Positions 48,038 to 64,000 of a stretch of DNA of 64,000 nucleotides are shown here, piece after piece. Below the pieces are notes generated by a model. That model worked only from the letters and a program-made list of their open reading frames with translations, made no database searches and was not told the origin of the DNA. The number at the start of each line of letters is the position of its first letter. Positions within the stretch are counted from its first letter, which is position 1. The stretch lies in the IMG/VR virus record IMGVR_UViG_3300049846_001037, positions 141,427 through 205,426 of that record, one strand, 5' to 3'. The position numbers and the translations under genes were made by a program.

Positions 48038-49550
48038 GGTACTGCAGAGCTGCAGGGCGGCACTGCAGGGCGCAAAGAAAAAGCCCCCGTGTTGCTGGGG
48101 GCTTATTCTTGGGAGCCTATCTTTTTCCAGTCCATTAGGGCTTGGCTATATCTGGGTTGTTCATCGTAATCATCATCGTAGTTATTTCCCCATTTGTTGC
48201 CCCTAACAGCCCCATCCACCTGCCTTAGCCGGTCACGCATTTGCCTATTCTCTTCTTGAAGGAAATGAAGAAGTTCCATCATCTCCTTAACCTTCTTTGG
48301 GGTGGTGGGAGGAACATGAGTCAACTCTTCCTCTAAGTCCCGAACAGTCTTCTCCAGTTCATCGACGGTATGTTCGTAGGTCTTTATTTCTTTATCCTTG
48401 TCATCGATCTCTTTCTGCATCTTGCCTTTCTCTTTTTCATGTTCAGAATCTTTTTCTTCTAACTTGTTCTCCAGAGAGGTGATGGTATCCCGTGCAGAAT
48501 CAAGTTCCTGTTCTAAGACAGGAACCTTTTCTGCTTCCTTCTTCAACTCCTCGTATGTGTGGAGATGGTCTAGAAGTCCCATTTACTTGAGGTGAGGGAA
48601 TTGTTCTTTCTCCCACTCCATCCCTTTCGTGAAGGCTCGGTGTATCCAGAAGAAGCAGATGCCAGCGATGAAGAATGGCAGGGTGATGGCTCTTGCGAAC
48701 TTCTCTCGGTTGCTCATTTCTTTTCTCCGATGATGGGAGGCAGGATGATGACCTTCTCACAGACCTTGGAGTAGGTATTGCCGCTCTTGCATCTCCAGAT
48801 GTTCAAGCAGCCCTCTGGCGTTCCCTCATAGCCGGTGCCGATGGCTTCGCAGTCATCCTCTCGGCCGTCCATGAAGGTGATGTGGAAATACTTGGGAGGC
48901 GTATCCTCACAGCCAGCCAAGAACCCCACGCAGAGGAGAGCAAGAAAAAGATTCTTCATCGGCTCACCTCGTAGTAGTTGCATTCATGTTCGTTGCAGGC
49001 TTGATGCTTGGGAGTCCAGATGAGTCCAAAGAGGTGAGGCTCGACCATCTGCCAGTTGTAGCGGGCATAGCCGACACGAGCTTCGGAACGGACGAAACGC
49101 ATCTTCTCACAGCCCAGTCCGATGGTGCCATAGAGTTTCGGAGCGATGTAGAACTTGGGGATGAAGAGGTAGAGGACCAGAGCCGCCAAGCCCCAGCCAG
49201 CCCAGTCGTTGATGAAGGTAGACACGGCTTCGGCATGGGGAATGGTGAGGCAGAGCAGGAGCGTGGTGCCGCCATAGAGGATCATCAGAAGGTCGTAGAT
49301 GTTGATGTAGCCATCCTTAGCCAGTCGCCCACGCAAGAGGCGATAGGTAGGACGAGCCAGCAGCACAGCAGAGAAGATGTAGAGCGGCAGGAGGCTTCTC
49401 ATGACTTCACCTCAAACTCTTTAGAGGAATAGGAGTAGTCGGGGTTCGTCTTCGTTGCTATGAACTTGTCAGCCGCTTCTTGGCTCAGGAAAATATCCTC
49501 CACCTCTGGAGACTCCCATGCCAAACAATGCTTGAAGACAACATAGACCT

Positions 49551-49901
49551 TCATGACTTCACCTTGAGAAGTTCTTGCATCTTGTTATGCATCTTCATCT
49601 TGTGGTCGGAGTGACCAGAGCAGGCTTGCATCTTGGGCGGGATGAAGTCGGGGTTGTGTTCCAGCCAAGCGAGAACATCGTAGCCGTTCTCGTCATCAGG
49701 GCTGTGGCTGAGTTGCCAGTCGATATGGACTTCGGAGAGCAGACCCTTCCAGTTACGGAGCATCATGATGCCATCGTAGTAGTTACGGGCATAGATGAGT
49801 TGGGTCTTGCCTGCGGCGATGTTGGCTCCATCCTCGGTATAGTCGGGGATGATGTCTTGCCAACGCTTCTGATCGTCGATGATGAGGATGACTTTCATCA
49901 C
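49551..49901 (-). CDS. stand-alone receiver-fold protein (cyclic-phosphate-processing REC-like)
   Basis: ILIIDDQKR...ARNY...HIDWQL...NGYDVLAWLE...CSGH pattern. Confidence 0.55.
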   Translation of the reverse strand: MMKVILIIDDQKRWQDIIPDYTEDGANIAAGKTQLIYARNYYDGIMMLRNWKGLLSEVHIDWQLSHSPDDENGYDVLAWLEHNPDFIPPKMQACSGHSDHKMKMHNKMQELLKVKS

Positions 49902-50590
49902 GCCACCTTCCTGTAACCCTTGGAGTGGACCTTGACCTTCACCACCTTGCGGGCTTCTTCTTCGGTGTAGTCGTCCTTGGAATCCTGAACGCCACGCTCA
50001 ATGCGACCCCACTTGGCGGTGAACAGACCATTGGGGTTGGCGTAGATTTCCCAAAACTTGTTGTGGTTGCCCTTGGTGCATTCGTAGCGACCCTCGAAAT
50101 CCAGACGGCGGACGGGCTTGGCGGTGGACTTGCTGACCTTGGTGATTTTGCCGTCCTTCAACTTGAGGTAGACCTTAACACCTTCCTCGGCGTCTGTCAC
50201 GTTCTCCCTCTTGAGCTCTTTGCCCAACTTGGAGAGTTCGTGGATGTTGGCTCCCATCAGCACTTCGTAGATGGCAGGGATGGGAGCGTCAAAGGTCTCC
50301 TTGACGATTTCGAGGAAGTCACGGAGCGAGGTCTCCTTGGAAACCTTGTCCATCATCTTGCCAGCCTTCTTAGAGCCCAGCAAGAAGGCAGACGAATTGG
50401 GCAGGCAACCCTTGGACTTGAGGTACGCCTCGATGATCTTGTCACGCTCAGGGGTCCGTTCCTCAGAACCGACATACCCGCCAATCTTCTCCCCAGCCGT
50501 GAAGGCTTTGAAGAAATCGGATTCCGTCAGGTCCGAAGAAAGACCCCCCAAGACCTTGGCTTTGTCGATGACGTTGTTGTTGGTCAACAT
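49898..50590 (-). CDS. WGR-domain protein
   Basis: C-terminal ECTKGNHNKFWEI...FTAKWGRI...KGYR. Confidence 0.7.
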   Translation of the reverse strand: MLTNNNVIDKAKVLGGLSSDLTESDFFKAFTAGEKIGGYVGSEERTPERDKIIEAYLKSKGCLPNSSAFLLGSKKAGKMMDKVSKETSLRDFLEIVKETFDAPIPAIYEVLMGANIHELSKLGKELKRENVTDAEEGVKVYLKLKDGKITKVSKSTAKPVRRLDFEGRYECTKGNHNKFWEIYANPNGLFTAKWGRIERGVQDSKDDYTEEEARKVVKVKVHSKGYRKVA

Positions 50591-50714
50591 GGTATTCTCC
50601 TGAGTTATGAGCAAAGTATAACTAATTAATGATAGCTTGTCAAGAGGATTGTTATTGTATTTTTGTAAAGAGACTCCATCTGGGAGCCCTGGGATCCTAG
50701 CTCCCGTCGTAGGC

Positions 50715-50730
50715 TACTTAAAAATAAGTA
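50715..50730. repeat. intergenic palindrome copy 9
   Basis: TACTTA-AAAA-TAAGTA. Confidence 0.9.
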
Positions 50731-50833
50731 AGGGCAGCAGGTGGCAGCGGGCGGAGGTGGCAGGCTGCTCTGGGCGCAAAGAAAAAGCCCTCCGTTTCCA
50801 GAGGGCTTCTTCTTGCTTGGGTTGGCGAGGGTG

Positions 50834-51034
50834 TTAGTGGCGGCGGAGGTTCATGCCGAGCCGCTTCATGGCGACCAGGAGCGGGACGTACTTGAGGTTG
50901 GAGCCGTTCTTGCTGTTGACGCTCTTGAGGACCGCCTTGAGGCTCTTGGTGGGCGTGACCATCGCCACCAGCTTCTGGATGCGCTCCTTGGTGTAGATGG
51001 CGGGGCGACCACGCTTGCTCGTCTGCTTCTTCAT
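50834..51034 (-). CDS. small basic DNA-binding protein (AT-hook-like KRGRP plus helical domain)
   Basis: MKKQTSKRGRPAIYTKERIQ...YVPLLVAMKRLG; has its own promoter and terminator. Confidence 0.5.
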   Translation of the reverse strand: MKKQTSKRGRPAIYTKERIQKLVAMVTPTKSLKAVLKSVNSKNGSNLKYVPLLVAMKRLGMNLRRH

Positions 51035-52690
51035 GGCGTTCTCCTACGTTTGTGAGGGTTTAGTCCCTCGGTGGTGGATGATGGATGTATCTTAACCTTT
51101 TCGTTAGCGCTTGTCAAGGGTTATTGTTATCAACCCCAGACAATTTTCTTTATCTGCTTGACAAGGGCTTTTTGGTCAGCAGGGGTCAACTGGCTGAACA
51201 GGGTCATGTGGTCGGGAATCATCTCAGCCATGACGGAGCCAACGTTCTTCCCACCAGTCAACTGATGGACTTCATAGACCATGCGTTGCCCGATGGTCTT
51301 GGCTTCCTTCAACGCCTCTTCCAATGTCACGGCTGGCTTCTTCATGTCGGCGTTCCCTTCTGGATGTTGTAGATAGCCTTGAGCACCCACTCCTCAGTCC
51401 AACGGGAATTGCAGTTGTCGCAGGAGACATGGGCGTAGGCGTGTTCCATGTCGATAGGCTCGATGGCGTCAAGGGCTGTGGTGCCGCCGTCGAAGCCGCA
51501 GACAGGGCAGGCATAGTCTTGCAGATATTTCTTGGAAGCCTTAGCCTCTTCCTCGTCTTGGAGTTTAGCCAAGTGACCTTCGACCTCAGCCTGAACCTGC
51601 TCTGGGTCATCGGGCTTCTCAACGAGTTGTCCTGCCTTGTTGCGTGCCATGTCATCATCCTAGATATGGACAGCGCCCTTGTCAATGCTGATGTGGCTCA
51701 GACGCTCACAGAGTTTCTTGATGCTCTGTCCTGTGGAAGCCCTCTCGTAGACTTCGTTGAGGATGAGTTCGGCTGCTTTCTGGAGAAGACCTCGGTCATC
51801 GTAAGCCCGCAGGTTGGTGCAGTAGGATGCGTCATCCACTTGCTCCCAGCCTGCTCCCGAATCACGCATGACATCGAATCGCAGCAGAGGCTCATCATCG
51901 GGGTCTTCGGGGCGGTAGTCGCCATTGATGCCTTCGGCGCAATCCCAGCAGATCTCAACACGGACATTGTTGCGGGTGACAGAGATGATGGGGCAATCGG
52001 ACTCCACATCTTCCTGCATGAGCATCCGGCGGAAGTCTTCCTTGGATTGGTGAACCTTGTCCCCGATGGCATCAAAGGGCATGGCTTACCTCTCGATCTT
52101 GATGTTGAGGGTCTTAGCCAGAGCCTTGGCTTCCTTCTGTTCCGCTTGCGTCACGCCCTCGTTCAGAGCCTTGACTTGCAGAGCATAGTATCGCCAGTGC
52201 TTCTTCTCGTTGGAGAGCATGGTGCGGACCTGCTTCTCCAAGAGCAGCATCTCCTTACGGGTCAGGGTGGTGGTCACACCCCCGCCGTTGGCATTGATGA
52301 GCCTGACATAGAACATCTTCTTGCGGCCGTCCTTGAAGGGCTTGACGGAGATGTTGGGCTTCTTCATGGCTTACGCCCTCCGTGTGGGGGTCATCCAGTC
52401 GGGATACTTCACCGCCCAGTCCAAGCCCACCGTGCGGCAGAACTTGGTCAGCGCCCGCTTGCCGCCCGTCAGCAGAAGGCCAGCGTGGCCGACATAGGGG
52501 GTGTGGGTCCGCCTCATGGTCACGCCCATCTCCTTCGCCACGTCCTTCATGGTGTTCCAAGGGTAGGTCGTCCCCTTGACGTAGGAGAGGTCCAACTCGA
52601 ACTGCTTCTTCGTGGGCTTCTGCTGCTTGGTAGCCATGACTGTCTCTGAGTTTGAGTATGGGATTAGTATAACTTGTTTATGCTAGCTTG

Positions 52691-53215
52691 TCAAGCATAG
52701 TAGAGGCAGGGGATGATTTCTTTTTTCTGCTTGAGGTAGGCGGAGACCCGATGCCAGCCATCTTGGAAAAGACCGTCATCCTTGTAGGACGAGAAGATGG
52801 TAGGGAAGTCGGTGGTCTTATGGCGAGGGATGCCTTCCCCTTCCCGCTCGTTCAACCACTCCTTGAGGGTATCATGACCGCTTTTCAAAGCCTTGAAGGA
52901 CTTCATCAGGGCGGCTTCGATCTCGGAACGGGGAACCATCGCCAAGCCAAACTTGACTTTCCCGTAATGCTTGTCGAAGAAGTCCATGTTCTTGAGGATG
53001 AACTTGTGGATAAGAGGTGAGGGGTCATCCTTGCCGAACAGGACTCCCTGATGCTCTTGTAGCTTTTTTGTCAGAGGTGGCATCTTCCATGCTTCCCCAT
53101 CCACAGCCATGTACCAGATCATCGCCCTCTTAGCCCCCAGAGGGAGTTGGGAGAAGGGCATGACCTTGCCGTATTTCTTGGCGAGGTGTCTGTTCCAGCA
53201 GTTGAGGTTAGCCAC
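52691..53215 (-). CDS. possible ParB/Srx-like domain protein
   Basis: PTIF...LFQDGWHRVSAY...IIP resembles the ParB-N DGxHR motif. Confidence 0.35.
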   Translation of the reverse strand: MANLNCWNRHLAKKYGKVMPFSQLPLGAKRAMIWYMAVDGEAWKMPPLTKKLQEHQGVLFGKDDPSPLIHKFILKNMDFFDKHYGKVKFGLAMVPRSEIEAALMKSFKALKSGHDTLKEWLNEREGEGIPRHKTTDFPTIFSSYKDDGLFQDGWHRVSAYLKQKKEIIPCLYYA

Positions 53216-53658
53216 GGGGTTTCCATCCTTTCAGCCGCTTGGTGCAATCGGAGTTCCAGCCCAGTTCCCGCCAAGCCTTGCGGCAGGACTCAACACGGGT
53301 CATCCCCTGCTTCTCGTACTTGAAGGCGAGTTCGTTGCATTGACGCAGACGCATCAGGCGGGTGTATTCCTTCTCCCCAATGCGGCGGCGAAAGGCTTTC
53401 TCGGTCTGTTGGCTCTGGTATTCGCCCCAAGAGAGTCCCGTCTTCTTCTCGAAGTCCTTGTGGGACTGGTCCAGAGCCTTCTCAGCCAACTTAACAGCGT
53501 CAAGCAGGTCATAATACTTCTTGGCGGCGGTGTGGACGTTGGCTTTGGCGGACTTGAGGATTTGGGCTTTGGTGGACATGGGCTTCTCCCTTGAGTTGAA
53601 CCCATGATAAACTAATTCCCTGAACTTGTCAACGCCCGCTGCGAGGAGGTGGCTCGTT

Positions 53659-53674
53659 TACTTAAATTTAAGTA
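53659..53674. repeat. intergenic palindrome copy 10
   Basis: TACTTAAATTTAAGTA. Confidence 0.9.
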
Positions 53675-54040
53675 GTCTTCAGGATCCTGCAGAGCTCTGC
53701 AGCTGCAGCCTTAAGCAAGAAACCCCATCAAGCTTTCTGATGGGGTTCTCGTGGGAATCTGCTGATGTCTATTCGTTCTGGTGTGTGGCTGGGACTATAT
53801 CGTTCTTGTTTCTTGTAGAGCCTATTTGCAGGTATCCCGTATTTCCTGCCCTCGAACATTACCCTACACCAGTCTTTATCTTTCTGGGTGAACACCGCAA
53901 CAACTTCTACTTTCCTGACTGGGGGAGAGCTAAGTCTTTTGTCCCCATCTACGAAGGCATAGTCGGTGTAGGCTATGCTGGACTTCTCTGCCGAGGGTTT
54001 GTTGTGGTGGGTCAGTTTAATGAACCCCGGCACTTTGTCT

Positions 54041-54811
54041 TCATTCGTTACTGGGTTTCTCTCCAGTTTCCTGAATCTCTTGTTCGATGACATTTGCTCC
54101 CCCAGAGGCGTTGGAAAAGAGAATCTTCCTAGCCTCATTATTTTCGTTGGCTTCAATCTCAATCTCTTTCATCCCGTTGGCTTCGTGAGCATGACCAAAG
54201 AGATGGAGAAATAGATTCTTGAAGAACGGATATTCATTACGCAAGGCGCTGCCGAACAATCTGGTGTAAAGGCAGTTGTAGCCGATGTGTTGTCCGCCAT
54301 AGTTGTGGTCGAGGACTTGGCTAGGCGGGGCGTGGGTAATCAGAACATTGATGTTGGGGCCGAGCTGATGCAGGAGTTCATTGAAGTCGAACTCCTCTAG
54401 CTCCTCATGCCACTCTTTGATAAGCGGGTGGATACCGACGGCCAAGCCAACGGACAAGCCATCCACTTCAACCACACGAGCGCCCTTGAATTGGGTGATG
54501 GCGTTGGGGAAAGCTTTTGAGAAGTCGCAGAAGTCGTGGTTCCCATTGACGATGATGAGAACCCGATGCGGGATTCGGTCAAGCAGAGGCTTCAAGGCAT
54601 TGATAGCCCATTGAAGTTGGTGGGCTCCCTCAGCCTCTCTGTCTATTTTACGAAATCCGTTGGCTAAGAGAGTCATGTATTTTACATGGGTAGGCGCAAT
54701 GTCCCCACTCAAGACAATCCAATCAAAGGACTGCCCTGAGGCAATAATCTTCCACAGGATCTTTAGAATCCCATGAAGGTCGGAAAGATGAAGGATGCGA
54801 AGGGTTCTCAT
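54041..54811 (-). CDS. calcineurin-like metallophosphoesterase
   Basis: SDLHG, SGD, GNHD, THAPP and FGHAH motifs. Confidence 0.85.
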   Translation of the reverse strand: MRTLRILHLSDLHGILKILWKIIASGQSFDWIVLSGDIAPTHVKYMTLLANGFRKIDREAEGAHQLQWAINALKPLLDRIPHRVLIIVNGNHDFCDFSKAFPNAITQFKGARVVEVDGLSVGLAVGIHPLIKEWHEELEEFDFNELLHQLGPNINVLITHAPPSQVLDHNYGGQHIGYNCLYTRLFGSALRNEYPFFKNLFLHLFGHAHEANGMKEIEIEANENNEARKILFSNASGGANVIEQEIQETGEKPSNE

Positions 54812-54907
54812 AGTGGGGTCATTGTATTACATCTGGCTGGTTCGTCAAGTGGCCAATTTTACAAAAGGGGCTTGCTCGCTGGTGGTTTTGATGGCTCGCT
54901 ACCGATT

Positions 54908-54923
54908 TACTTAAATTTAAGTA
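54908..54923. repeat. intergenic palindrome copy 11
   Basis: TACTTAAATTTAAGTA. Confidence 0.9.
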
Positions 54924-55127
54924 GAGACTCGCCTGCAGCTAAGCCCGGATATACTGCAGTGCGCTTAAGAGCCCCATTGGGAAATAAGGGTTTTCAGACG
55001 CCTAGCTGCAGGGATCTGCAGATATGTGCCGCTAATCTCCTGGGCACGAGCTTAGTACGCCTGGGCACAACAAAAAAGCTCCCCAGCTTGAGGGAGCTTT
55101 CTTGTGCGGCTACGGGCTTACGCTTTC

Positions 55128-55370
55128 TTAGGCTACTACGGCTTCTGGCTTCTTAGCCGCATTTGCCTTTTTAATTTCGGCGTATTTCTTGGGTATCTTC
55201 AACCCATAACGCCTGATGGCTCGATTGATGGAGACATAGGGCCATTTATGACCGCCTTCCATCTTCTCGGTCTTCTCTCGGCATTGCTCCTTGATGGGCT
55301 TGCCAAGAGTCTCCTTAATTCTTATCATTTCCTTGATGTCATCTTCCGTGTAACATATGGGGCGAGGCAT
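55128..55370 (-). CDS. small basic DNA-binding protein, apparent paralog of 50834-51034
   Basis: MPRPICYTEDDI...YVSINRAIRRYGL. Confidence 0.45.
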   Translation of the reverse strand: MPRPICYTEDDIKEMIRIKETLGKPIKEQCREKTEKMEGGHKWPYVSINRAIRRYGLKIPKKYAEIKKANAAKKPEAVVA

Positions 55371-56670
55371 TGCTAAACCTCCAACAAGTTGGGATACAGT
55401 CTTACCTTATTATACTTTTAGTGGGACGAAAGCACAAGTTTTTTTGTGGAAGAATGACGGACGCCCTCTACATTGTCAAAGGCACCCCATAGTTTTCCAT
55501 AACCGGCTTTTTCGGGGAGGCGTTTCAATACACGCAACAGAACATGACCTTTGCCAGACACAGAACGATTACCGTCCGTAATTGAGAACTTGTCTTTCCC
55601 CAACGAAAGTATCATCACGCTGGTCTTGTTTATCCAAAGCCTCTCGAACTCCAGTAGGAGCTTGGCTTCGTATTGGCTTGGCTTGAAATATGCGGGCATC
55701 TCTTCTCCTGAGTATCAGTAACTCATTATACTCAGGAAAAGAGATCCTTTCAAAAAAATCTTATCGAACCCGCAGTTTCTTGCCGCTCTTCCCACGTCGG
55801 ATGAGGCTCATGACATCCTCCTTCGGTTGATATCACTTCTTAGAAGAAGCCGTTGTACTTCACAGCTTCCCTGATGCTGTTGACGATCCGTGCCTTCGCA
55901 GCCCTGTCGAAGTTCTCCATCACGTTGTTCATGATGCCACTGGAGGTGACGGCTCGGCTGCTCTCGTTCAGGACGTTCTCCGTGAGGTGTTTCAGGAACC
56001 GCTCCAGCTTCTCTGACTCAGGAACCTTCTTGTTCTCCTGCAGAGCCTTGGCCATGTCGATGTAGAGCCCCAGCCACTTGTGGTAAGCAGCGTGGTCGCA
56101 GGCATTGGAGCCCCACGTCAGGAACTTATGCATGTCCTCAGCAGCCTTCTCCTTGTAGGACGCCATCAAGGCGGACATGCCCTGATGTTCCGTCCACATC
56201 CAGTTGATGCAGGCTTGCAGGTTGAGCTTGGACTTCTTCTTCACTGTAGCCATGACATCTCCTACTTAGAGCGAATGGGCTTGGCTTGAGGACGCCCCTT
56301 CTTCTTGCAGTTCGGGCAGGGCTTCTTGCGTTTGTCGTTGGCTTTCTCCAACTTCCTCAGTTCAGCCTGAGGTGTAGTTCGGGAGAACTCAGCCTTCCCC
56401 GTCTTGGGGTTGAATTCGATCTTGATCATTGGATGTACTCCTCAGCAGCGTCCATCGCCATCTGGGCTTTGCCTTGACCATGAGCAGCATAGCGGGTCTC
56501 CTCGACCAACCAACGCTTGGTGCCCATCTTACCAGGCAGCGGAATCTTCACCGTGAGGACTCCCACCCCATTGTAGGTCATCACTTGGAACTTGATGCCG
56601 CTCTTATGCTCGGCCGTGAAGTCCGTCTCTGGGCGATGGACATCAGGCACCCACTTCAGTTTGGGTCGCT

Positions 56671-56958
56671 TCATTGCTCCACCTCTTTGGTCAGAGATTG
56701 GCAGAGTTGGTAGTAGCTGCCATTGCCTAAAGCTGTGGGACTGCCATAGAGCTTCCAGCCATCCTGGAGCATTTGGTTGACTCGCCTGCTCAGGTCATCC
56801 TCGCTGCTATCGCAGACCATCGAGTAGACCGTCACCTTCTTCGGCACCTTCTGCTCCTTCGCCCCAGACAACTGGAAGGGGACGAAGACCGCCAAGAAGA
56901 CGAGACACATCAGCGATGCCCAACCTTGTGGCGTGAGACGCTTGAAGAACTTCTTCAT
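56671..56958 (-). CDS. membrane-anchored DUF1737-like protein
   Basis: TM segment followed by LSRRVNQMLQDGWKLYGSP...LCQSLTK. Confidence 0.55.
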   Translation of the reverse strand: MKKFFKRLTPQGWASLMCLVFLAVFVPFQLSGAKEQKVPKKVTVYSMVCDSSEDDLSRRVNQMLQDGWKLYGSPTALGNGSYYQLCQSLTKEVEQ

Positions 56959-56968
56959 GGCTGGCTCC

Positions 56969-57505
56969 TCAGATGAACTTCACCTTGATGGCGACGATGT
57001 TGCCCTTGGCGTCTTCACGGGTGTAGGCGGTGTAGGAGCCATCGCCGTAACCGCTGCTCGACACGGCTCCGTGAGGCATGACGCCACCGTGGTTCTCGTG
57101 GTTGGGGTCTTCCTCGTTGCCGCAGGTGAGGGAGCAGGCGGCAGCGTAGAAGGGAGCCCCGCCATCCTTGTCCTTGTCCTTCGCCATCTTCTCCCATTGC
57201 TTGGTGATCTTGCCCACCGACTCCGAAGCCTTGCGGTAGAACTTGTCATCGAAGATGGACATCTGACCGCTGTCCACGCCGCAGTCGATGTTGAGGGCGA
57301 TCCACTTGTCGGCAGGCTTCGCCTTGGCGTGGGTCACGACCAGGCTGGCGACACGTCCCTCACGGTTGAGGTTGGCGGTAGCCTTCCACTCGCCCTTGAG
57401 GACGCCGCTGACGGTACCGGCGCAGATGGTGCCCTTCTCGTAGCAAGGGTCGGAGATGCGGACTTTGCCGGTCTCGATGGTGAAGGTTCCGATGGACTTC
57501 TTCAT
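56969..57505 (-). CDS. DUF4241-like protein
   Basis: GKVRISDPCY, GVDSGQMSIFD and SSGYGDGSY motifs. Confidence 0.55.
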   Translation of the reverse strand: MKKSIGTFTIETGKVRISDPCYEKGTICAGTVSGVLKGEWKATANLNREGRVASLVVTHAKAKPADKWIALNIDCGVDSGQMSIFDDKFYRKASESVGKITKQWEKMAKDKDKDGGAPFYAAACSLTCGNEEDPNHENHGGVMPHGAVSSSGYGDGSYTAYTREDAKGNIVAIKVKFI

Positions 57506-59044
57506 GGTCTACTCCTGAGAAAAGTCGATGCTGATGTTCTTGATGTTGCGGAACGCCTTCCACAAGGCATTCTCCTGCTTCTCGACCATCTCACGGGAGC
57601 CACGCAGAGTCAACCCCAGATTGATGTCGTAGGTGCGGTTCTTCGTCTGCTGGAAGTTGAAGCCCCCACCCGTGACCCTGAACTTCTTGGGGAACCCCTT
57701 GGGCAGACGGCTGTTGACCCGCTCACGAGCCTTCTGCTCGAAGGTCTCGTCATCGAAACGCTGTTCGAAAGGGATCTTGATGGTGACATCCACGATGGTC
57801 TTCATGGCTTACTCTCCCTCAGGATGCAGGAACTCTTGGATGTCGTCCGCCTTCCAGTCGCCCTGCTTCTTAGCCCTGATGCGGAATGCCTTCTCGTTGA
57901 GACGTTGGTTGCTGACGGGCATGGAGACCCCAGTCAGGGAAGTCCTCTCAGCGAAGCCCTCGTTCATCTCCGCCACAGCATCATCCAGCGTGATGGTCTT
58001 GGGTATGGGCTTGGTGGAGAGGATTTCCACCTGAACGACGGTCCTGTAGAAAGCCATGTCAGACTCCGGAGAAGGGCTTGCAACGGGTGACTCTGGTCAG
58101 TTTTCTGCCACCAGTCAACTCGGTGATGAGTTCGACTTCACCCTCTAAGGAGTGAGTGGAACCGAACTGAGGAACTGAGGCGTGGGACTTCAAGGAGCGA
58201 GTCCACACGAAGATGTTGCCTTCACGGTCTTCGAACATGAGGGTGTAGTTGTGGGCATTCACAGCCCCTCGTGTCTCCTTGACGTAGACCACCTTACCCG
58301 TGAAGATTGCCTTCATGGCTACACCAGAGAGCAGGCAACACGGTGGGCGGCCAGCAAGTCGGCAGCACCCTCATCGCCATCACCGTTGGTGTAATCGTAC
58401 TTCTTCTCCAGGTTCTTGGACCATTGGCGGTAGAACGCCATGTCGGGCAGGTCATCGTGTCCCGTGAAGCAGGTCTCGTCGTCATCAGCGCCAGGGCAGG
58501 TCGAGAGCAGTTCCACCTCAGGCTTTTCCTCCTGCCCCAGCTCCCAGCCCATCTGCTTGAGCAAACGGACCATCTCGTTGGCGACCACGGTCTCGTTCTT
58601 GCTGAGTTTGTAGATGACCTGCATGGCTTCCTCCTGCTCTTGAGTTGACTCCATACTAACTTAAAGAGTACTACTTGTCAAGCCACCACGGTCAGCCCCC
58701 GCTTCATCTGCTTCTCCCACTCATCCGAATAGGCTTTGGGACGCAACAGGTTCTTTTGCTTGGGATGACCATTGCGATAAGCCCAACGGCAGACATTCTC
58801 AGCATAGTTGCGACCATTACGCCTGACACCCATCTTCCCCAGAAACTTCTCCTCAGCATGTCGAGGGTTCTTGGCTCGTAGGGGCTTATGAGTCCAACAG
58901 CACATGTCGCTGTGGATGATGGCGAAGACATAGTAACGGGGCATGGGGTTCTCCAAGTGATGTCTTAGTATAACTTCCCAGCAGCCACTCGTCAACCGTC
59001 GGCCGCAGCCAACTGCCGTCGTTGGGATCTGGGAGCCCCTTGTC

Positions 59045-59060
59045 TACTTAAATTTAAGTA
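59045..59060. repeat. intergenic palindrome copy 12
   Basis: TACTTAAATTTAAGTA. Confidence 0.9.
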
Positions 59061-59462
59061 AGCGCCGATGTCCGGTCGTTGGGCGATGAGCTCTACCCAG
59101 AAAACAGAAAAGCCCCACCCTTTCGGATGAGGCTCTTCTGTGCACCCGGCGTACCACCCTATGCTGATCCATGGGTCATAGGGAACCCGTCTTACACTTA
59201 ATACCGATGCTTGATGGCGGCGAATTGGGCGAAGGTGAGGGTAGGCTTGATGCCCTTCAACTGGCAGTAAGCCTTCCACAACTCTCTGTCGCAGGTGTAT
59301 TCGCCAGGAGTCGGCTCACACTCGATGTTGTCGATGAACTGAGCCGCTGTGTGGGAGTCGATGTCCTCCACACGCTCGAAGCCCCAGATGTCTTTGAGGT
59401 AATTGCGGCTCTCCCTCGAAAGGGGAAAAGCCGTCTTGAGGGTGGCGGACATCTTTGACTCC

Positions 59463-59561
59463 TTAGTGGTTGAAGTGCTGTACCACCGCTGCCCCGATGA
59501 CGAACAGGATGGCGATGACGATGACCAGTTCGACCAAGGTGAAGCCTCGTTGGTTACGCAT
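59463..59561 (-). CDS. 32-aa mini type IV prepilin (class III signal peptide plus hydrophobic helix only)
   Basis: MRNQRG/FTLVELVIVIAILFVIGAAVVQHFNH*; GAGG RBS; below the length cutoff of the ORF track. Confidence 0.8.
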   Translation of the reverse strand: MRNQRGFTLVELVIVIAILFVIGAAVVQHFNH

Positions 59562-60950
59562 GACTACCTCGAAGGGGAACGATGGACTTGCTGACGCCAG
59601 ATGTGGGCGGTGATGGTTCGGTCAGCCTCCATCTTCTTGTCCAGAAGCTTGTTGTACTTCCTCCGTCCATAGGCTTGGGCGGCGATGAGCTTGCGGCAGA
59701 GAGCAGCCAGCCTCTTGACATTGCGAGGCGTAGGGTTCTTGAGAGCCGCTTGGATGACTGCCTCTTGCTGCGTCATGTCCGACTCCTACTAGATGAGCTT
59801 CTTGCGGCGGAGTTTGGTCCGCAGGTTCTTGAGAGCCTTGATCTGGTTGCGGAGCTGAACGCCCTCCAGGCTGTGACCCAGATCGTGGATGCTGACGTTC
59901 TGGAGGTAGGTCTTGTACTTCTTCTCCAAGACCTTGATCTCTTCGTTGATGACATCGCTCACACGGAGTCCCATGACTTACCTCAAGAGGGATTGGAGTT
60001 GCGTCATTTCCTCGGTCAGAGTTTCATGGCGGCGTTTGGGACTGTTCCAAGAATCAAGATAGTCCCTGTCCACCAGAGCCGCAGCAGCATCCTTGACGGC
60101 TCGTTGGATATGCTTCTGAGGAACCTCAACCTTCATCTTGAGAAGGTCCAAGACCACACCAACCAAGACAGTTGGATTGTAGTCGTTTGCCTTGATCTTG
60201 TCAAGCGCCCTGCTCAGGTTGTTCTCAGTCAGAGATGCCCTGTTGCGACGGAAGTAGTCCATCTCGTCTTGGACATCATCGCAGGCAGTGCTCTGTTCGC
60301 CCCAGGCTCCCATGACTTACCTCAGATGCTTCGGTTGGCGGTTGACCCACTTCTGCCATTGAGCGAAGGTCATGTCCGCAGGCAGGTTGTGGAAGGCGAG
60401 GTACTTCTCGGTGATGCTGTGGTCATCGGGCCAGACTTCCTTGGGCTCCTCTTCACGGTTCTCGATGAAGAGCGCCACCCAGCCCAGAGGCAACTGGCTG
60501 ATGTCCTTGATGCCCTTGGGCTCCCCATCGTACATCTGCTTGATGTACTTGATCTCCGATGGGGTCAGCGTGGTCGTCACCTTGTTGCGAGAGTGGAGCT
60601 GCTTCTTGAAGGCTTCGATCTGAGCCTTCTTCTTCTTGGCGTCTTTCCGCAGATGCTTGACGGTCTTCCGCAGCTCGTCCATGATCTGACCAGCGAGGTC
60701 ATCGTCGGGCTTGGCAATGTGGACAGCGTGGTTTTGGTGAGGCATGGCGTTCCTCCTTGATGTTGAACCCATCATAAACCAAACGCCTTAACTTGTCAAT
60801 AGTAGCCCTTCAGCCTAATGAGAGACCAGCGAAGTTTATATAGATTGGTGAGGGCTTCATCAATGGTCTTGATGAACACAGGGCATCCAGCAGTCCTCTT
60901 GAGTCTCTGCATCTTCGTTATCTCTTTGCTGACGATTTCTCCATTGGCTG

Positions 60951-61571
60951 TCATTTGACCTCCAATGCCCTGACCTTCTTTGCGATGACTTTATGCATCC
61001 CAGGGTTGATGAGCAGAGCCTCTGGAACAATGCCATGTCGAACCCTATTACGAGCATGACCCATATCCTCGTTGGTCATGTCCTCAGTCCAAGGAACATG
61101 CTTGTTCTCGGCATAGATGATCAGGTCAGATTTTGTGGTAAGGAGGAAAGGACGGACGACATTCTTATTGCGGTAGGGGATGAGTTTGGGAACCCCATGA
61201 CAGGCACCCATCAGCCATGTCTCAATCTGGTCATCGAGATGATGGGCGGTGATGACTGGGACTTCAAGGCTATGGAAAAACTTGTAGCGTTCATCTCGCC
61301 AGTATTCTTCCCAAGACTTGCTCTTAGGCTTGTCCGAAGAAATCCTCTGAGCAATCATCCCAGTCAGTCCCATCTGGGTGAGGAAGTCCAGAGCCTTGGC
61401 GGAAGTCTCAGTGCCGTGGTCAAAGAAGACAGGGGCAATACGCCGCTTGCCATTGACCCCATGCTTGAGGAAGTGATAGACGGCCATGGAGTCTACGCCA
61501 CCAGAGACGGCAACGTAATGCAACTGGTCATATTGAGGAAGGCTTCCGAGAATCTTTAGCATAGCGCCCAC
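60951..61571 (-). CDS. tilS: tRNA(Ile)-lysidine synthase, catalytic domain only
   Basis: PP-loop AVSGGVDS, RDERY, TAHHLDDQIET, RPFL, EDMTN, RNRVRH. Confidence 0.85.
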   Translation of the reverse strand: MGAMLKILGSLPQYDQLHYVAVSGGVDSMAVYHFLKHGVNGKRRIAPVFFDHGTETSAKALDFLTQMGLTGMIAQRISSDKPKSKSWEEYWRDERYKFFHSLEVPVITAHHLDDQIETWLMGACHGVPKLIPYRNKNVVRPFLLTTKSDLIIYAENKHVPWTEDMTNEDMGHARNRVRHGIVPEALLINPGMHKVIAKKVRALEVK

Positions 61572-62000
61572 ACCGTCCTGTCTGCCCGCATCTCCACCAA
61601 CCTAGCCCTCTCAGCCTTCTCGTTGGTGTCAGCGAAGTAGAAGTGGTCAGCCTTGTAAGGGTTGTACTTCACCTGCCGCAGTTTGGCTTCGGAGCTCAAC
61701 ACTACACCAAACTCAGGTATCTTGCCAATGACGAAGGCGTGGACATTCTTACGCTTCTGCTCAAGGACTCGCTTATGCCCACCCGGACGAACACGGAATT
61801 CCACATTCGTCACAACCACAGACTTCTCATGCCCCACAACCTTGCCCCCAACCATCAGAGACCAGATGGACTTATGCAGGTTGTAGTAGATGTAGGTCTT
61901 CATGTCGTCCTCCTTGAGATGGGTTAATATAACTTAAGGAGAAAGACATGTCAAACTCCTATCTGCGATCCTGCAGGGACATGGCACCACCTCCTTTCTC

Positions 62001-62016
62001 TACTTAAATTTAAGTA
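62001..62016. repeat. intergenic palindrome copy 13
   Basis: TACTTAAATTTAAGTA. Confidence 0.9.
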
Positions 62017-62098
62017 ACCGACTTCCTCCTCCCGTGTTAGCACCGACGACAGCCCAAAACAAAAAACCCCCAGTCGTTAGACTGAGGGCTTTTTGTAG

Positions 62099-62362
62099 TT
62101 TGCTGTGGGAACACCGGATTTCTACCGGACTGGTCAGACACCTCTTTTCATAATCCACTTAGTCAGGGCGGGTATCCAGTTCTCGACTAAGTGGTGTAAC
62201 ATATTTCAATCTATAATATAAATAGGTTTTTCCCAACCTTGGCCCTTCTCCTATTTCCCATATGGAAATATGAGTTGGGTTAGAAAGGGGAACGCCTCGT
62301 ATTGTCGGCAGATGGTGATCAAGCCACCCACCGACTGACCTTTGGGCTAGTTCCACAGCAAA
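62099..62362 (-). ncRNA. unclassified structured RNA of about 265 nt
   Basis: Terminal stem TTTGCTGTGGAAC/GTTCCCACAGCAAA plus several internal hairpins. Own promoter (TATAAT at 62382-62387) and terminator (62061-62094). Confidence 0.6.
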
Positions 62363-62799
62363 TTGTTAAAGACCTATCCCTATTATACTGGTTCCTTAGG
62401 GATTTACAACTACTTCTGGCGGTTGATGCGGCGGGAGATTCGCCCCATCTTGTTGAGAGCCTTACGCTTCCTGTTGCGGTTGGCGTAGGTCTTCCCGTTG
62501 GTCGTCTGGTTCTTGCTCTTGGGGCGGAAGAAGTTGAACATTACTTGCTCCAGGGATTGGACAAGGCATCAGCCACCTTGTCGCAGGGAACCTCGGTATA
62601 GATGGGGCCGCTGATTCCCCTGAACCCACTCACCGCAAAGCAGAGTTGAGTCCGCTTGTCCTGAACATACTTCAGGTTGCGGGTGATGGTTCGGTCCTCT
62701 GCGGGGTTGGGGCCGAAGCCTCCATTGAACGCCACCGCAAAGAGGACCAACAGCACGATGTTGAGAACGAGCAGCACCTTGTTCATGGTAGACCCTTTC

Positions 62800-63057
62800 T
62801 TAATCGATCTGAGTGATGACCACGGTTCCGCTTACTTCCACGAGCTTCTTGGTTGCCTCATCCTCGAAGCAGTAGCCATCGGACTGGGATTGGTTGCTCA
62901 CGTTGCCGGTAGCCACCCATGAGCCAACCTTTTGACCCCCGCTATAGAGGTCCACCCGATGACGCTTCCCCAGCGAGTTCCACTGGGCCATCGTGGCATC
63001 CTTACAGCCACTCACCAACAGAGCGGCCAGAGCGATGAACAACAGATGCTTTCGCAT
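62800..63057 (-). CDS. small lipoprotein
   Basis: Signal peptide with lipobox LVSGC. Confidence 0.55.
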   Translation of the reverse strand: MRKHLLFIALAALLVSGCKDATMAQWNSLGKRHRVDLYSGGQKVGSWVATGNVSNQSQSDGYCFEDEATKKLVEVSGTVVITQID

Positions 63058-63075
63058 GACTTCCCCTTTCAGAAA

Positions 63076-63170
63076 TGGTAGGGGTAGAGGGATTCGAACC
63101 CCCGACGATTTCCATCAAGCCAATCTCTCGACTGTCCGATGGCCCCAGGTACCGCTCCAGGCATACCCCT
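63076..63170 (-). ncRNA. atypical tRNA-like RNA (95 nt, CCA-ended) with no canonical anticodon loop
   Basis: Acceptor AGGGGTA/TACCCCT plus A-CCA; D arm CCT-GGAGCGGTACCT-GGG; T arm GGGGG-TTCGAAT-CCCTC; anticodon arm CCATC-GGA-CAGTC-GAGA-GATTG-GCTT-GATGG. Confidence 0.7.
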
Positions 63171-63176
63171 ATAAAA

Positions 63177-63253
63177 TGGTGGTCCCGGCAGGACTCGAAC
63201 CTGCGACCAAGCGATTATGAGTCGCCTGCTCTAACCAACTGAGCTACGGGACC
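63177..63253 (-). tRNA. tRNA-Ile2 (CAU, lysidine-modified)
   Basis: GGTCCCGTAGCTCAGTTGGTTAGAGCAGGCGACTCATAATCGCTTGGTCGCAGGTTCGAGTCCTGCCGGGACCACCA. The anticodon arm GGCGA-CTCATAA-TCGCT is ileX-type rather than Met-type. Confidence 0.9.
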
Positions 63254-63894
63254 ATTTACTTATTATACTTTAAGACGCCCGTAAACGTCAATTAGTTTTT
63301 GGTGTTTTTCAGAGGCTTGAGGCTTGCCTTGACCTTGCGGAGCTTGTTGCCCATCTCCGCCTTGCCCACCACCTCGTTGATGACACGGGTGGTCTCGATG
63401 CTCTTGGCGACCTTCTGTATTCGCTTGAGGAACTGCTTGATCCCCTGCTCACCAGCAAAGGTCTCCACAGACCCGCTGGAATGGAACATGTCGATGCGGT
63501 TGTCGCTCATCACGATGGTCGTCTGCATGGTCTTACTCCTGTTGCCCATTGTAGCCGAGATATTCGAGCTGACGCCTGATGATCTTCACCAGCGTCTCAT
63601 CGCCCTTGGCTTCGGCTTCTTTGAGTTGTTCCAGTAGGATATTCATAGTGGGGTAAGTATAATCTTTTGAGAAATGTCTGTCAATAGAAAAATGCAAAAA
63701 GCCCTCCCCAATTTCTGAGGAGGGCTTCTTGTTTAGGGCTCTTCTACTTCTTGGTCTTCTTTACCTGCTCGTAGGTAACGTGGGCGCAGGGGAAGTAGGG
63801 CGTTCCAGTTCCCTGCCAAGACTTCCCCTTGCATTTCGGGCAGGTCTTGACCTTGTGCTTGTTGGAGCCAGCAATGAAGCCCATGTCATCCTCC

Positions 63895-64000
63895 TACTTC
63901 TTAGCCATGCTCAGAGCCACCTTGAGAGCCTTCTCCTTGATGGCGGCTCCCGAACCGAACTGGGTGGCGTTGAACCGAGCCTCGTCCTTGCTCTTGAAGG
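63895..64000 (-). CDS. C-terminus of a DUF932-like protein (5' part outside window)
   Basis: ...DEARFNATQFGSGAAIKEKALKVALSMAKK*. Confidence 0.45.

What the first reader, a model, noticed from the sequence alone, without database searches (positions are those of the whole stretch)
62099..62362. Independently transcribed structured RNA of about 265 nt with T-loop-like arm and possible pseudoknot
Seen on the minus strand: promoter TTGTAA-16-TATAAT; 13-bp closing stem; GGTCA/TGACC inner stem; 12-bp hairpin GTCGGTGGGTGG/CCATCTGCCGAC; CCCAAC/GTTGGG enclosing TATTTCC/GGAAATA, with CCCTT able to pair across to AAGGG (pseudoknot); an alternative CATATTTC/GAAATATG pairing; 10-bp hairpin CCACTTAGTC/GACTAAGTGG; CCGG-TAGAAAT-CCGG just before the closing strand; then a terminator. 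There is no credible ORF. The topology echoes the tRNA-like domain of tmRNA, but G3-U70 and CCA are absent. Inference: a possibly new phage ncRNA class, located between tilS and the tRNA pair.
Basis: partly seen in the sequence, partly recalled or inferred. Interest (0 to 1): 0.75.

Follow-up and report, generated by a model that had tools for sequence, protein, structure and literature searches.

The report
New structured phage RNA beside tRNA-Ile2/TilS
The flagged stretch is a real gene for a folded non-coding RNA of about 280 bases plus terminator, with its own promoter; it matches no catalogued RNA family, occurs only in a small group of uncultured freshwater and soil phages, always next to a tRNA and its modifying enzyme, and its function is unknown.

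Summary
On the minus strand there is a sigma-70-type promoter (62409-62382), a core of about 280 nt (62374-62097) and a strong intrinsic terminator (62094-62056).

I found three full homologues in metagenome contigs (L093/L094, L095, L096) and one probable distant homologue (L103). All lie after a conserved basic 43-aa ORF. Wherever downstream DNA is available, they lie upstream of an N-domain-only TilS gene.

A covariance-model alignment of the four sequences gives:
- 87% of cells paired, against 41-49% in slid controls;
- 27 pairs changed on both sides, against 5-8 in the controls;
- 0 of 500 shuffles reaching the observed values.

G·U pairs outnumber A·C pairs 35 to 8, which fits the promoter strand. 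The 65-aa ORF exists only in the window. It is cut by stops in every homologue and frameshifted in sister strains.

Rfam 15 gives no match for any member. ARAGORN finds no tmRNA. The genome has no Ro or reverse transcriptase gene.

A different pseudoknot is supported: the P5 loop pairs with GGYGUCU, with one compensatory G-C to A-U change.

Verdict: a new structured ncRNA family of narrow range. My best guess is a trans-acting folded RNA tied to the phage's tRNA(CAU)/TilS module, but this is inferred, not shown.

The parts
62382..62409 (-). Sigma-70-type promoter, TTGTAA-16-TATAAT. The likely transcription start is about 62375/62374.
   Evidence: A TATAAT at the same aligned place is present in L095 and L096. 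In sister strain X3 the -35 hexamer becomes TTGAAA, which is closer to consensus.
62365..62374 (-). Conserved 5' leader GGUCUUUAAC (consensus GKUCUUUGAY).
   Evidence: 7 of 10 columns are invariant in four sequences. The same leader opens the divergent RNA of L103 and L099.
62350..62364 (-). P1 closing stem, 5' strand.
   Evidence: It pairs with 62097-62112. 96% of cells are paired and two pairs switch U-A to C-G.
62341..62349 (-). Conserved junction UAGCCCAAA between P1 and P1a.
   Evidence: 8 of 12 columns (23-34) are invariant.
62304..62340 (-). P1a 5' strand (GGUC, 62340-62337) followed by hairpin P2 (12 bp, loop CUUGAUCA).
   Evidence: P2 has 8 of 12 pairs changed on both sides, and three G·U pairs in the window. 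P1a changes C-G to A-U in L095.
62280..62303 (-). Conserved stretch AAUACGAGGCGUUCCCCUUUCUAA. It holds a GAGGCGU motif and a C/U-rich tract that resembles an anti-Shine-Dalgarno sequence.
   Evidence: Identical in the window, L093 and L095. L096 keeps UUCCCUCC. Its pairing partner is ambiguous: P3a/P3b versus the pseudoknot.
62243..62279 (-). P4 long hairpin (P4a CCC/GGG, P4b with apical loop AUAUG).
   Evidence: There are compensatory changes in 8 of 13 pairs. The strain variant at 62263 falls in the loop.
62224..62239 (-). P4c hairpin AGGUU-GGGAAA-AACCU, with a GNRA-like loop.
   Evidence: 94% of cells are paired and the closing pair changes A-U to C-G in L095. L103 has a similar hairpin with loop AGGAAA.
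62195..62223 (-). Variable AU-rich single-stranded linker.
   Evidence: Only 7 of 34 columns are invariant. Three of the four listed strain differences lie here, including indels of +2 and -1.
62155..62194 (-). P5 hairpin (10 bp, loop of about 20 nt). Loop bases 62177-62171 (GGAUACC) form the 5' strand of the pseudoknot.
   Evidence: P5 has 5 of 10 pairs changed on both sides. The pseudoknot has 100% of cells paired.
62132..62154 (-). Junction AUUAUGAAAAGA, then the pseudoknot 3' strand GGUGUCU (62142-62136), then the P1a 3' strand GACC (62135-62132).
   Evidence: The window has A...U where the three homologues have G...C at the same pseudoknot pair. 8 of 12 junction columns are invariant.
62114..62128 (-). 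P6 hairpin CCGG-UAGAAAU-CCGG, whose loop fits the T-loop sequence signature.
   Evidence: 6 of 7 loop columns are invariant. One stem pair changes C-G to U-A in two sequences.
62097..62112 (-). P1 closing stem, 3' strand.
62056..62094 (-). Intrinsic terminator: A-tract, 10-bp GC-rich stem, UAAC loop, U-run.
   Evidence: Homologous terminators are present in L093, L095 and L103.

Best explanation
Shown: this is a separate gene for a structured non-coding RNA of a family that is not in Rfam. Host-type RNA polymerase would start at about 62375 from a sigma-70-like promoter and stop at a strong intrinsic terminator at about 62056.

The RNA folds as follows:
- A long closing stem, P1.
- A three-way junction of P1, the T-loop-like hairpin P6 and the short helix P1a.
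- Beyond P1a, hairpins P2, P4, P4c and P5.
- A pseudoknot between the P5 loop and the strand just 5' of P1a.

The stems covary, while the junctions and the P4c and P6 loops are nearly invariant. The gene is single copy. It sits in a conserved module: tRNA(CAU), three small ORFs (the last a very basic 43-aa peptide), this RNA, then an N-domain-only TilS.

Inferred: the RNA acts in trans through its three-dimensional fold, as a binding partner or scaffold for a protein or RNA of the translation apparatus. Candidates are the co-conserved basic 43-aa peptide, the minimal TilS or its tRNA(CAU), or the ribosome. I think this more likely than a simple antisense regulator. The partner and the effect are unknown.
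For: Gene boundaries:
- Promoter and terminator in the window.
- The same terminator, followed by a further TTGACA promoter for the next gene, in L093 and L095, and the same arrangement in L103.

Homologues:
- nhmmer E-values of 8e-54, 5e-38 and 8e-9.
- Covariance-model scores of 290, 285, 262 and 213 bits.

Structure:
- 86.6-87.8% of cells paired, against 38-49% with partners slid.
- 27 pairs with changes on both sides, against 5-8 in the slid controls.
- 0 of 500 shuffles reaching the observed values.
- RNAalifold independently recovers P1, P2, P4b, P4c, P5 and P6.
- Every homologue folds better than its shuffles, z = -4.6 to -7.5.

Strand: 35 G·U pairs against 8 A·C pairs. The model scores 285 bits on the minus strand and 22 bits on the plus strand.

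Not coding:
- No Pfam or PHROG family and no homologue for the 65-aa ORF.
- All frames hold at least 4 stops in the homologues.
- Indels of +2 and -1 in sister strains.

Fold-dependent function: leader 7/10, J1/1a 8/12, J5 8/12 and P6 loop 6/7 columns are invariant while the stems vary, and a pseudoknot is present.

Module: tRNA(CAU) upstream in every contig that reaches that far, and TilS N-domain downstream in 3 of 3. The 43-aa peptide is conserved.
Against: - There are only four distinct full-length sequences plus one divergent one, all from one narrow phage clade. The covariation statistics therefore rest on few independent events, and the synteny could simply be inherited.
- There is no expression evidence. 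The single 'RNA' run that holds the sequence is probably DNA.
- No partner was identified. Phages with a related minimal TilS (PA5oct and IMG/VR relatives) lack the RNA, so TilS does not generally need it.
- The conserved C/U-rich tract, the AU-rich linker and the U-tail would also suit a base-pairing sRNA.
- P3a/P3b and the pseudoknot compete for the same strand and cannot be resolved with four sequences.
Confidence: 0.6

Rival explanations
1. A base-pairing regulatory sRNA. The conserved single-stranded C/U-rich tract (UUCCCCUUUCU), or the conserved 5' leader, pairs with Shine-Dalgarno regions of host or phage mRNAs and blocks translation. The rest of the fold gives stability, and the AU-rich linker plus U-tail bind a chaperone such as Hfq.
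For: - A C/U-rich tract is kept in the four aligned members; L096 has CCUCC, and L103 has a comparable UUCACCUUUU stretch read from its sequence, unaligned.
- The leader is conserved across both clades.
- The AU-rich linker and Rho-independent terminator are typical sRNA features.
- Phage genes nearby use SDs such as AGAAAGGG and GAAAGGGG, which are complementary to the tract.
Against: - Ten covarying helices, a pseudoknot and invariant junctions are far more structure than antisense sRNAs need.
- No significant target was found in the phage genome. The best leader complement is 12 of 13 to the consensus and only 11 of 13 to the window's own leader.
- The host is unknown, so host targets could not be tested.
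Confidence: 0.2
2. A cis-acting leader (riboswitch or T-box-like tRNA sensor) whose terminator controls read-through into the downstream TilS operon, for example by sensing tRNA(CAU).
For: - The RNA is upstream of TilS in 3 of 3 contigs with downstream DNA.
- It ends in a terminator.
- It carries a T-loop-like hairpin, as do the tRNA-elbow binders of T-boxes (my own knowledge).
- An AUG or AUA triplet sits in the conserved junction after P5.
Against: - A near-consensus TTGACA promoter lies between the terminator and the next gene in the window, L093, L095 and L103.
- The next gene differs between members: gp82-like, a 190-aa ORF, or TilS itself.
- No conserved antiterminator alternative was found. 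The P5/terminator similarity in the window is absent from L095.
- The Rfam T-box model and all riboswitch models are silent at E <= 10.
- RNA-tRNA duplex prediction is no better than shuffles.
Confidence: 0.08
3. A tmRNA-like or tRNA-like molecule that is processed at P1, receives CCA and is aminoacylated.
For: The topology matches the tRNA-like domain of tmRNA: paired ends, a T-arm-like hairpin directly before the 3' strand, a helix leading to a pseudoknotted body. tRNA genes lie nearby.
Against: - ARAGORN finds no tmRNA, and the Rfam tmRNA and tRNA models give no hit on the region.
- P1 is 13-16 bp with a bulge rather than 7 bp.
- There is no G3·U70 and no encoded CCA in any member.
- No tag-like ORF is conserved.
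Confidence: 0.03
4. A protein gene: the 65-aa ORF at 62159-62356 is the product.
For: An open frame of 65 codons with a GTG start exists in the window.
Against: - No Shine-Dalgarno sequence precedes the GTG.
- No family and no homologue among 5.8 billion proteins.
- The frame is interrupted by at least 4 stops in all homologues.
- Sister strains carry +2 and -1 indels inside it.
- Substitutions are compensatory in stems, not codon-patterned.
Confidence: 0.01
5. A DNA-level element (replication origin, packaging site or operator array) made of inverted repeats and an AT-rich core.
For: Both strands fold well, as for any set of inverted repeats. There is an AT-rich segment in the middle, and the locus is 1.9 kb from the end of the record.
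Against: - G·U pairs (35) greatly exceed A·C pairs (8), so pairing is kept at the RNA level on one strand only.
- The GC-skew turning points lie at about 55-60 kb and about 180 kb, not here.
- A promoter and terminator bracket the element in every member.
Confidence: 0.02

Closest known systems
tRNA-like domain of tmRNA (SsrA)
   Same: The 5' and 3' ends pair. A hairpin with a T-loop-like 7-nt loop sits immediately before the 3' strand. A second helix leads from the junction into a body that contains a pseudoknot. The gene lies near tRNA genes.
   Different: P1 is 13-16 bp, not 7 bp. There is no G3·U70, no CCA and no tag reading frame. ARAGORN and the Rfam tmRNA model are negative. SmpB dependence was not examined.
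ROOL and GOLLD, large ornate phage/prophage RNAs
   Same: They are phage-encoded, elaborately structured with pseudoknots, of unknown function, and often near tRNA islands. One GOLLD lies downstream of a Met-tRNA (bioRxiv 10.1101/2024.12.08.627333, read).
   Different: This RNA is two to three times smaller. The Rfam models for ROOL and GOLLD give no hit at E <= 10. Multimer or cage formation is untested. The range is far narrower.
Phage T4 stable RNAs RNAC and RNAD
   Same: They are small stable phage RNAs of still unknown function (PMC9697503, read). From my own knowledge, they are encoded in the T4 tRNA region.
   Different: From my own knowledge, the T4 RNAs are about 120-140 nt and are processed from the tRNA transcript. 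There is no sequence match to any phage in INPHARED. PMC9697503 classes the T4 RNAs as late; this RNA has a sigma-70-type promoter.
Bacterial Y RNA-like RNAs (YrlA)
   Same: The ends pair in a long stem, and the RNA carries a module with tRNA-like features, including a T-arm mimic.
   Different: The genome has no Ro/TROVE protein. The Rfam models are silent.
T-box leaders
   Same: Size of about 250-300 nt, multi-helix fold, a T-loop motif and a terminal terminator, upstream of a tRNA-related gene.
   Different: The Rfam T-box model gives no hit. There is a separate promoter after the terminator. No conserved antiterminator was found, and no specifier or NCCA pairing could be demonstrated.

Membership tests
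tmRNA | Detected by ARAGORN or the Rfam tmRNA covariance model | tested here: not met
   ARAGORN reports only two tRNAs in the window. Rfam at E <= 10 shows no tmRNA hit on 61900-62500.
tmRNA | 7-bp acceptor stem with G3·U70 and a 3' CCA (or a site for its addition) | tested here: not met
   P1 is 13-16 bp with a bulge. Its third pair is U-A or C-G. No CCA follows the 3' strand in any of the four members.
tmRNA | Conserved tag-peptide reading frame | tested here: not met
   No frame is open in all members. Each frame holds at least 4 stops in the homologues.
Y RNA / YrlA | Partner Ro (TROVE) protein encoded in the genome, and a match to the Rfam model | tested here: not met
   PF05731 is absent from the 205-kb record, with positive controls found. 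No Rfam hit. A host-encoded Ro cannot be excluded.
Retron msr-msd or other RT-associated ncRNA | Adjacent reverse transcriptase gene | tested here: not met
   PF00078 is absent from the genome. The neighbouring genes are a gp82-like gene and TilS.
T-box riboswitch | Match to Rfam RF00230, and a terminator that directly gates the downstream gene | tested here: not met
   No hit at E <= 10. A TTGACA promoter lies between the terminator and the next gene in all members.
ROOL / GOLLD / OLE / raiA / 6S / RNase P / SRP RNA | Match to the family's covariance model | tested here: not met
   None of the 4227 Rfam 15 models reaches its gathering score. At E <= 10 only terminator-driven leader hits appear in the window. 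At E <= 2 nothing falls on the RNA in L094, L096 or L103.
T-loop motif (structural motif, not a family) | G-C closing pair, U at loop position 1 and A at position 5 able to form the reverse-Hoogsteen pair, purine at position 4 | tested here: inconclusive
   The sequence signature is met in the window, L093 and L095 (G-C closure, U-A-G-A-A-A-U). In L096 the closing pair is G·G. The three-dimensional form is not testable with these tools.
Protein-coding gene | Reading frame conserved among homologues | tested here: not met

The most novel reading that the evidence does not exclude
The RNA is a new class of tertiary-structured phage RNA that works directly with the phage's own AUA-decoding module. 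It might dock tRNA(CAU) through its T-loop and GNRA elements and present it to the C-domain-less TilS. It might form a small RNP with the adjacent arginine/lysine-rich 43-aa peptide. Or it might be a ribozyme. In any of these cases it would be an RNA cofactor for tRNA modification or translation takeover, for which there is no precedent.
Probability: 0.12. Interest if true: 0.85.

Novelty: categorically new. Interest (0 to 1): 0.62.

Why it matters
Large bacterial and phage RNAs with many covarying helices, a pseudoknot and invariant junctions have repeatedly turned out to be ribozymes, riboswitches or RNP or RNA-only machines. New classes of this kind are now rare and mostly orphan.

This one is small enough (about 280 nt) for chemical probing and cryo-EM. 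It has clear boundaries and sits in a defined module of tRNA(CAU) plus a minimal TilS, which gives concrete partners to test.

It adds to the unexplained link between phage tRNA islands and ornate RNAs such as ROOL, GOLLD and T4 RNAC/RNAD.

Its weakness is its narrow range: a handful of uncultured freshwater, soil and sediment phages, with no cultured host. 'New' here means a new RNA family. Whether its mechanism is new is unknown.

Tried and rejected
- Direct DNA searches with the RNA found nothing: blastn against INPHARED phages; exact-pattern scans of IMG/VR with four patterns; two scans of GTDB genome contigs.
The 15-mer IMG/VR scan gave 69 chance hits.
- Anchoring on the downstream gp82-like gene failed. 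Relatives at 55-66% identity (L009-L017, L088-L090) lack the RNA, and that gene is itself strain-variable.
- Anchoring on TilS in IMG/VR and in cultured phages (L007, L008, PA5oct) found no RNA.
- What did work was anchoring on the upstream 81-aa and 43-aa ORFs.
- A protein-alignment scan of IMG/VR with the 81-aa family found nothing.
- The origin-of-replication idea is rejected on GC skew and the G·U excess.
- Ro, RT and tmRNA ideas are rejected.
- A regulated-terminator idea based on the P5/terminator similarity is rejected because L095 lacks that similarity.
- The anticodon 'specifier' idea (AUG or AUA after P5) is not supported. L103 has AUU there, and duplex prediction with tRNA(CAU) is no better than shuffles.
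- A target search for the leader and loops in the phage genome was uninformative.
- No RNA-seq evidence could be obtained.
- The CM did not align L103 globally. It gave only colinear local hits, so L103 is called a probable distant homologue, not a proven one.

Full report
**Setting.** The window is the last 64 kb of a 205,426-bp IMG/VR virus record, about 90% complete. Near-identical DNA occurs in freshwater, sediment, soil, wetland and sludge metagenomes. The genome carries 29 tRNA genes. Around the finding, all credible genes lie on the minus strand. In transcription order they are:
- tRNA(CAU), 63253-63177;
- an odd 95-nt tRNA-like gene, 63170-63076;
- ORFs of 85, 81 and 43 aa;
- the candidate RNA;
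- a gene like mycobacteriophage L5 gp82 (PF25735);
- a 206-aa PP-loop protein that passes the NCBIfam TilS N-domain cut-off.

**The observation.**
- The scan finds TTGTAA-16-TATAAT at 62409-62382, and a second, stronger promoter (TTGACA-17-TATATT, 61954-61926) after the terminator.
- The terminator (62094-62056) is an A-tract, a GC-rich 10-bp stem and a U-run. It is the only thing Rfam leader models latch onto.
- Without the terminator, the 264-nt stretch folds to -91 kcal/mol against -69 ± 5 for shuffles (z = -4.6).
- The plus strand folds equally well, so stability alone does not prove an RNA.

**Not a protein, not a known RNA.**
- The 65-aa ORF has no Shine-Dalgarno sequence, no Pfam or PHROG family and no relative among 5.8 billion proteins.
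- Rfam 15 at gathering thresholds finds only tRNA(CAU) in the window. At E <= 10 nothing but terminator look-alikes falls on the region.
- ARAGORN finds no tmRNA.
- The genome encodes neither a Ro/TROVE protein nor a reverse transcriptase.

**Finding homologues.** Direct DNA searches failed. Anchoring on the downstream gp82-like gene or on TilS also failed. The upstream 81-aa ORF did have relatives at 84%, 85% and 74% identity. Their contigs hold the RNA directly after the 43-aa ORF:
- L093, which is identical to L094 over the RNA;
- L095, from a 90-kb contig;
- L096, cut off within the terminator, so its RNA core is complete.

Scores were blastn 80% and 71%, and nhmmer E-values of 8e-54, 5e-38 and 8e-9.

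A further clade (L097-L103) was reached through the 43-aa ORF family. It has the small ORFs in swapped order. After them comes a 360-nt non-coding stretch with the following features:
- it opens with the same 13-nt leader;
- it has a P2-like hairpin with loop GUUGAUCG;
- it has a long AU-topped hairpin;
- it has a hairpin with loop AGGAAA;
- it has a 9-bp hairpin with a 21-nt loop;
- it has a GGAUUGAAAUCC element;
- it ends in a terminator followed by a TTGACA promoter.

This stretch folds with z = -6.1. The model does not align it globally and gives only colinear local hits. I therefore call it a probable distant homologue.

**Structure and covariation.** I built a covariance model from a four-sequence alignment with a hand-derived structure and realigned the members to it. 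They scored 290, 285, 262 and 213 bits.

| Measure (model-fitted alignment) | Observed | Partners slid 1-3 columns |
|---|---|---|
| Cells forming standard pairs | 86.6% | 41-49% |
| Pairs with changes on both sides | 27 | 5-8 |
| Covariation score | 0.43 | 0.08-0.15 |

None of 500 column shuffles reaches the observed values. P1, P1a, P2, P4a/b, P4c, P5 and P6 each carry at least one compensatory change. P2 has eight.

RNAalifold, run without my structure, recovers P1, P2, P4b, P4c, P5 and P6. The alignment was fitted to the model, which favours the structure, and four sequences are few. Even so, the contrast with the slid controls is large.

G·U pairs (35) far outnumber A·C pairs (8), so pairing is maintained on the promoter strand only. 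The model scores 22 bits on the opposite strand.

**A different pseudoknot.** In the homologues GGUUGG belongs to the separate hairpin P4c.

Instead, seven bases of the P5 loop (GGAURCC) are complementary to GGYGUCU, which lies 13 nt 3' of P5. All cells pair. The window has A and U where the other three have G and C, and L096 has a U·G wobble. This pseudoknot competes with the nested helices P3a/P3b, for which L096 is largely unpaired in P3a. I cannot decide between alternative states and a single pseudoknotted state.

**What varies and what does not.**
- Between the window and sister strains in two runs, four differences are listed inside the RNA. They fall in the P4b loop and the AU-rich linker, and include +2 and -1 indels that would frameshift the ORF.
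- By contrast, 22 listed differences fall in the 390 nt upstream.
- Caveat: 6 of the 30 differences in that contig were not displayed.
- Across the four homologues, overall identity (82%, 72%, 61%) is no higher than for the flanking genes.
- The leader, the P1/P1a junction, the junction after P5 and the P4c and P6 loops are nearly invariant, while the stems change.
- No reading frame is open in all members.

**Gene organisation.** In the window and L095 the RNA has a sigma-70-type promoter at the same aligned place, and L096 keeps the TATAAT there. In L093 that promoter is weak and an upstream TAGAAT may serve, by my reading of the sequence. Every member has the terminator followed by a near-consensus TTGACA promoter for the next gene.

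The next gene differs between members:
- gp82-like in the window (absent from some sister strains);
- a 190-aa ORF in L095;
- TilS itself in L093.

This argues against a leader or riboswitch role. The wider module, tRNA(CAU) ... RNA ... N-domain-only TilS, is kept wherever the contigs reach.

**Interpretation.** Shown: a single-copy gene for a structured RNA of a family absent from Rfam, bracketed by a promoter and a terminator (transcription itself was not observed).

Inferred: a fold-dependent, trans-acting role, probably as a binding partner within the translation-related module. The conserved, very basic 43-aa peptide next door, the minimal TilS and tRNA(CAU) are the obvious candidates.

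The main rival is a base-pairing sRNA that uses the conserved C/U-rich, anti-Shine-Dalgarno-like tract or the 5' leader. I found no target, and the host is unknown.

**Comparison with known RNAs.**
- The tmRNA-like topology is real, but every defining tmRNA feature tested is unmet.
- The closest analogies in kind are ROOL, GOLLD and T4 RNAC/RNAD, which are structured or stable phage RNAs of unknown function. ROOL and GOLLD often lie near tRNA islands, and from my own knowledge the T4 RNAs lie in its tRNA region.
- There is no homology to any of them.

**Verdict.** It is a new RNA family with good comparative support. Its range is narrow, it has no expression data, and its function is unknown.

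Noticed in passing
window 63076-63170 (-): A 95-nt tRNA-like gene directly after tRNA(CAU). ARAGORN calls it tRNA-Pro(CGG), but the Rfam tRNA model does not report it. It has a 7-bp acceptor stem, a canonical T-arm (UUCGAAU) and an encoded ACCA, with a long insertion in the anticodon/variable region. Its fold is no more stable than shuffles (z = -0.3). It is absent from L093, where only 16 nt separate tRNA(CAU) from the 85-aa gene.
   Followed up: partly
window 63177-63253 (-) and 60951-61571 (-): tRNA(CAU) is 100%, 91% and 90% identical in L093, L095 and L103. It always lies upstream of a TilS that consists of the N-terminal catalytic domain only (206 aa; TIGR02432 105 bits, cut-off 93.6). 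This is probably a phage tRNA-Ile2 plus its lysidine synthetase. The nearest cultured relatives of this TilS are Pseudomonas jumbo phages PA5oct and MIJ3 (46.5% aa).
   Followed up: partly
window 61556-61903 (-): The L5-gp82-like gene is strain-variable. Contigs in two metagenome runs join 61562 to 61910 and 61566 to 61971, skipping it, and L093 has TilS directly after the RNA.
   Followed up: partly
window 61959-62017 (-); L093 4783-4860: Between the RNA terminator and the next promoter lie a perfect 17-nt palindrome (TTACTTAAATTTAAGTA), a strong Shine-Dalgarno sequence and a mini-ORF (MSLQDRR* in the window, MSLQPSIIWV* in L093) that runs into the -35 of the next promoter. This could be an operator or leader-peptide arrangement. 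It is conserved in L093 but not in L095.
   Followed up: no
window 62410-62541 (-): The 43-aa ORF just upstream of the RNA encodes a very basic peptide (about a third Lys/Arg), conserved in six homologues with 22 invariant positions and no known family. A sister strain carries an in-frame 9-nt insertion near its 3' end. It is a candidate RNA-binding partner.
   Followed up: partly
L096 1931-2055; L093 2946-3019; L095 3445-3516: The relatives carry unusual tRNAs in the same module: a 125-nt tRNA (possible intron) in L096, a tRNA-Ile(UAU) in L093, and a tRNA with an irregular anticodon loop in L095.
   Followed up: no
window about 48600-64000 (genome 190-205 kb): The last 15 kb of the record has 51-54% G+C against 47% for the genome. 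The cumulative GC skew turns at genome positions of about 55-60 kb and about 180 kb.
   Followed up: no
window 62237-62260 (-): Exact 22-23-nt matches occur to an AlaRS-like gene (L091) and a NuoG-like gene (L092). In those genes the shared letters encode (W/V)EIGEGP. I judge these to be chance matches.
   Followed up: yes
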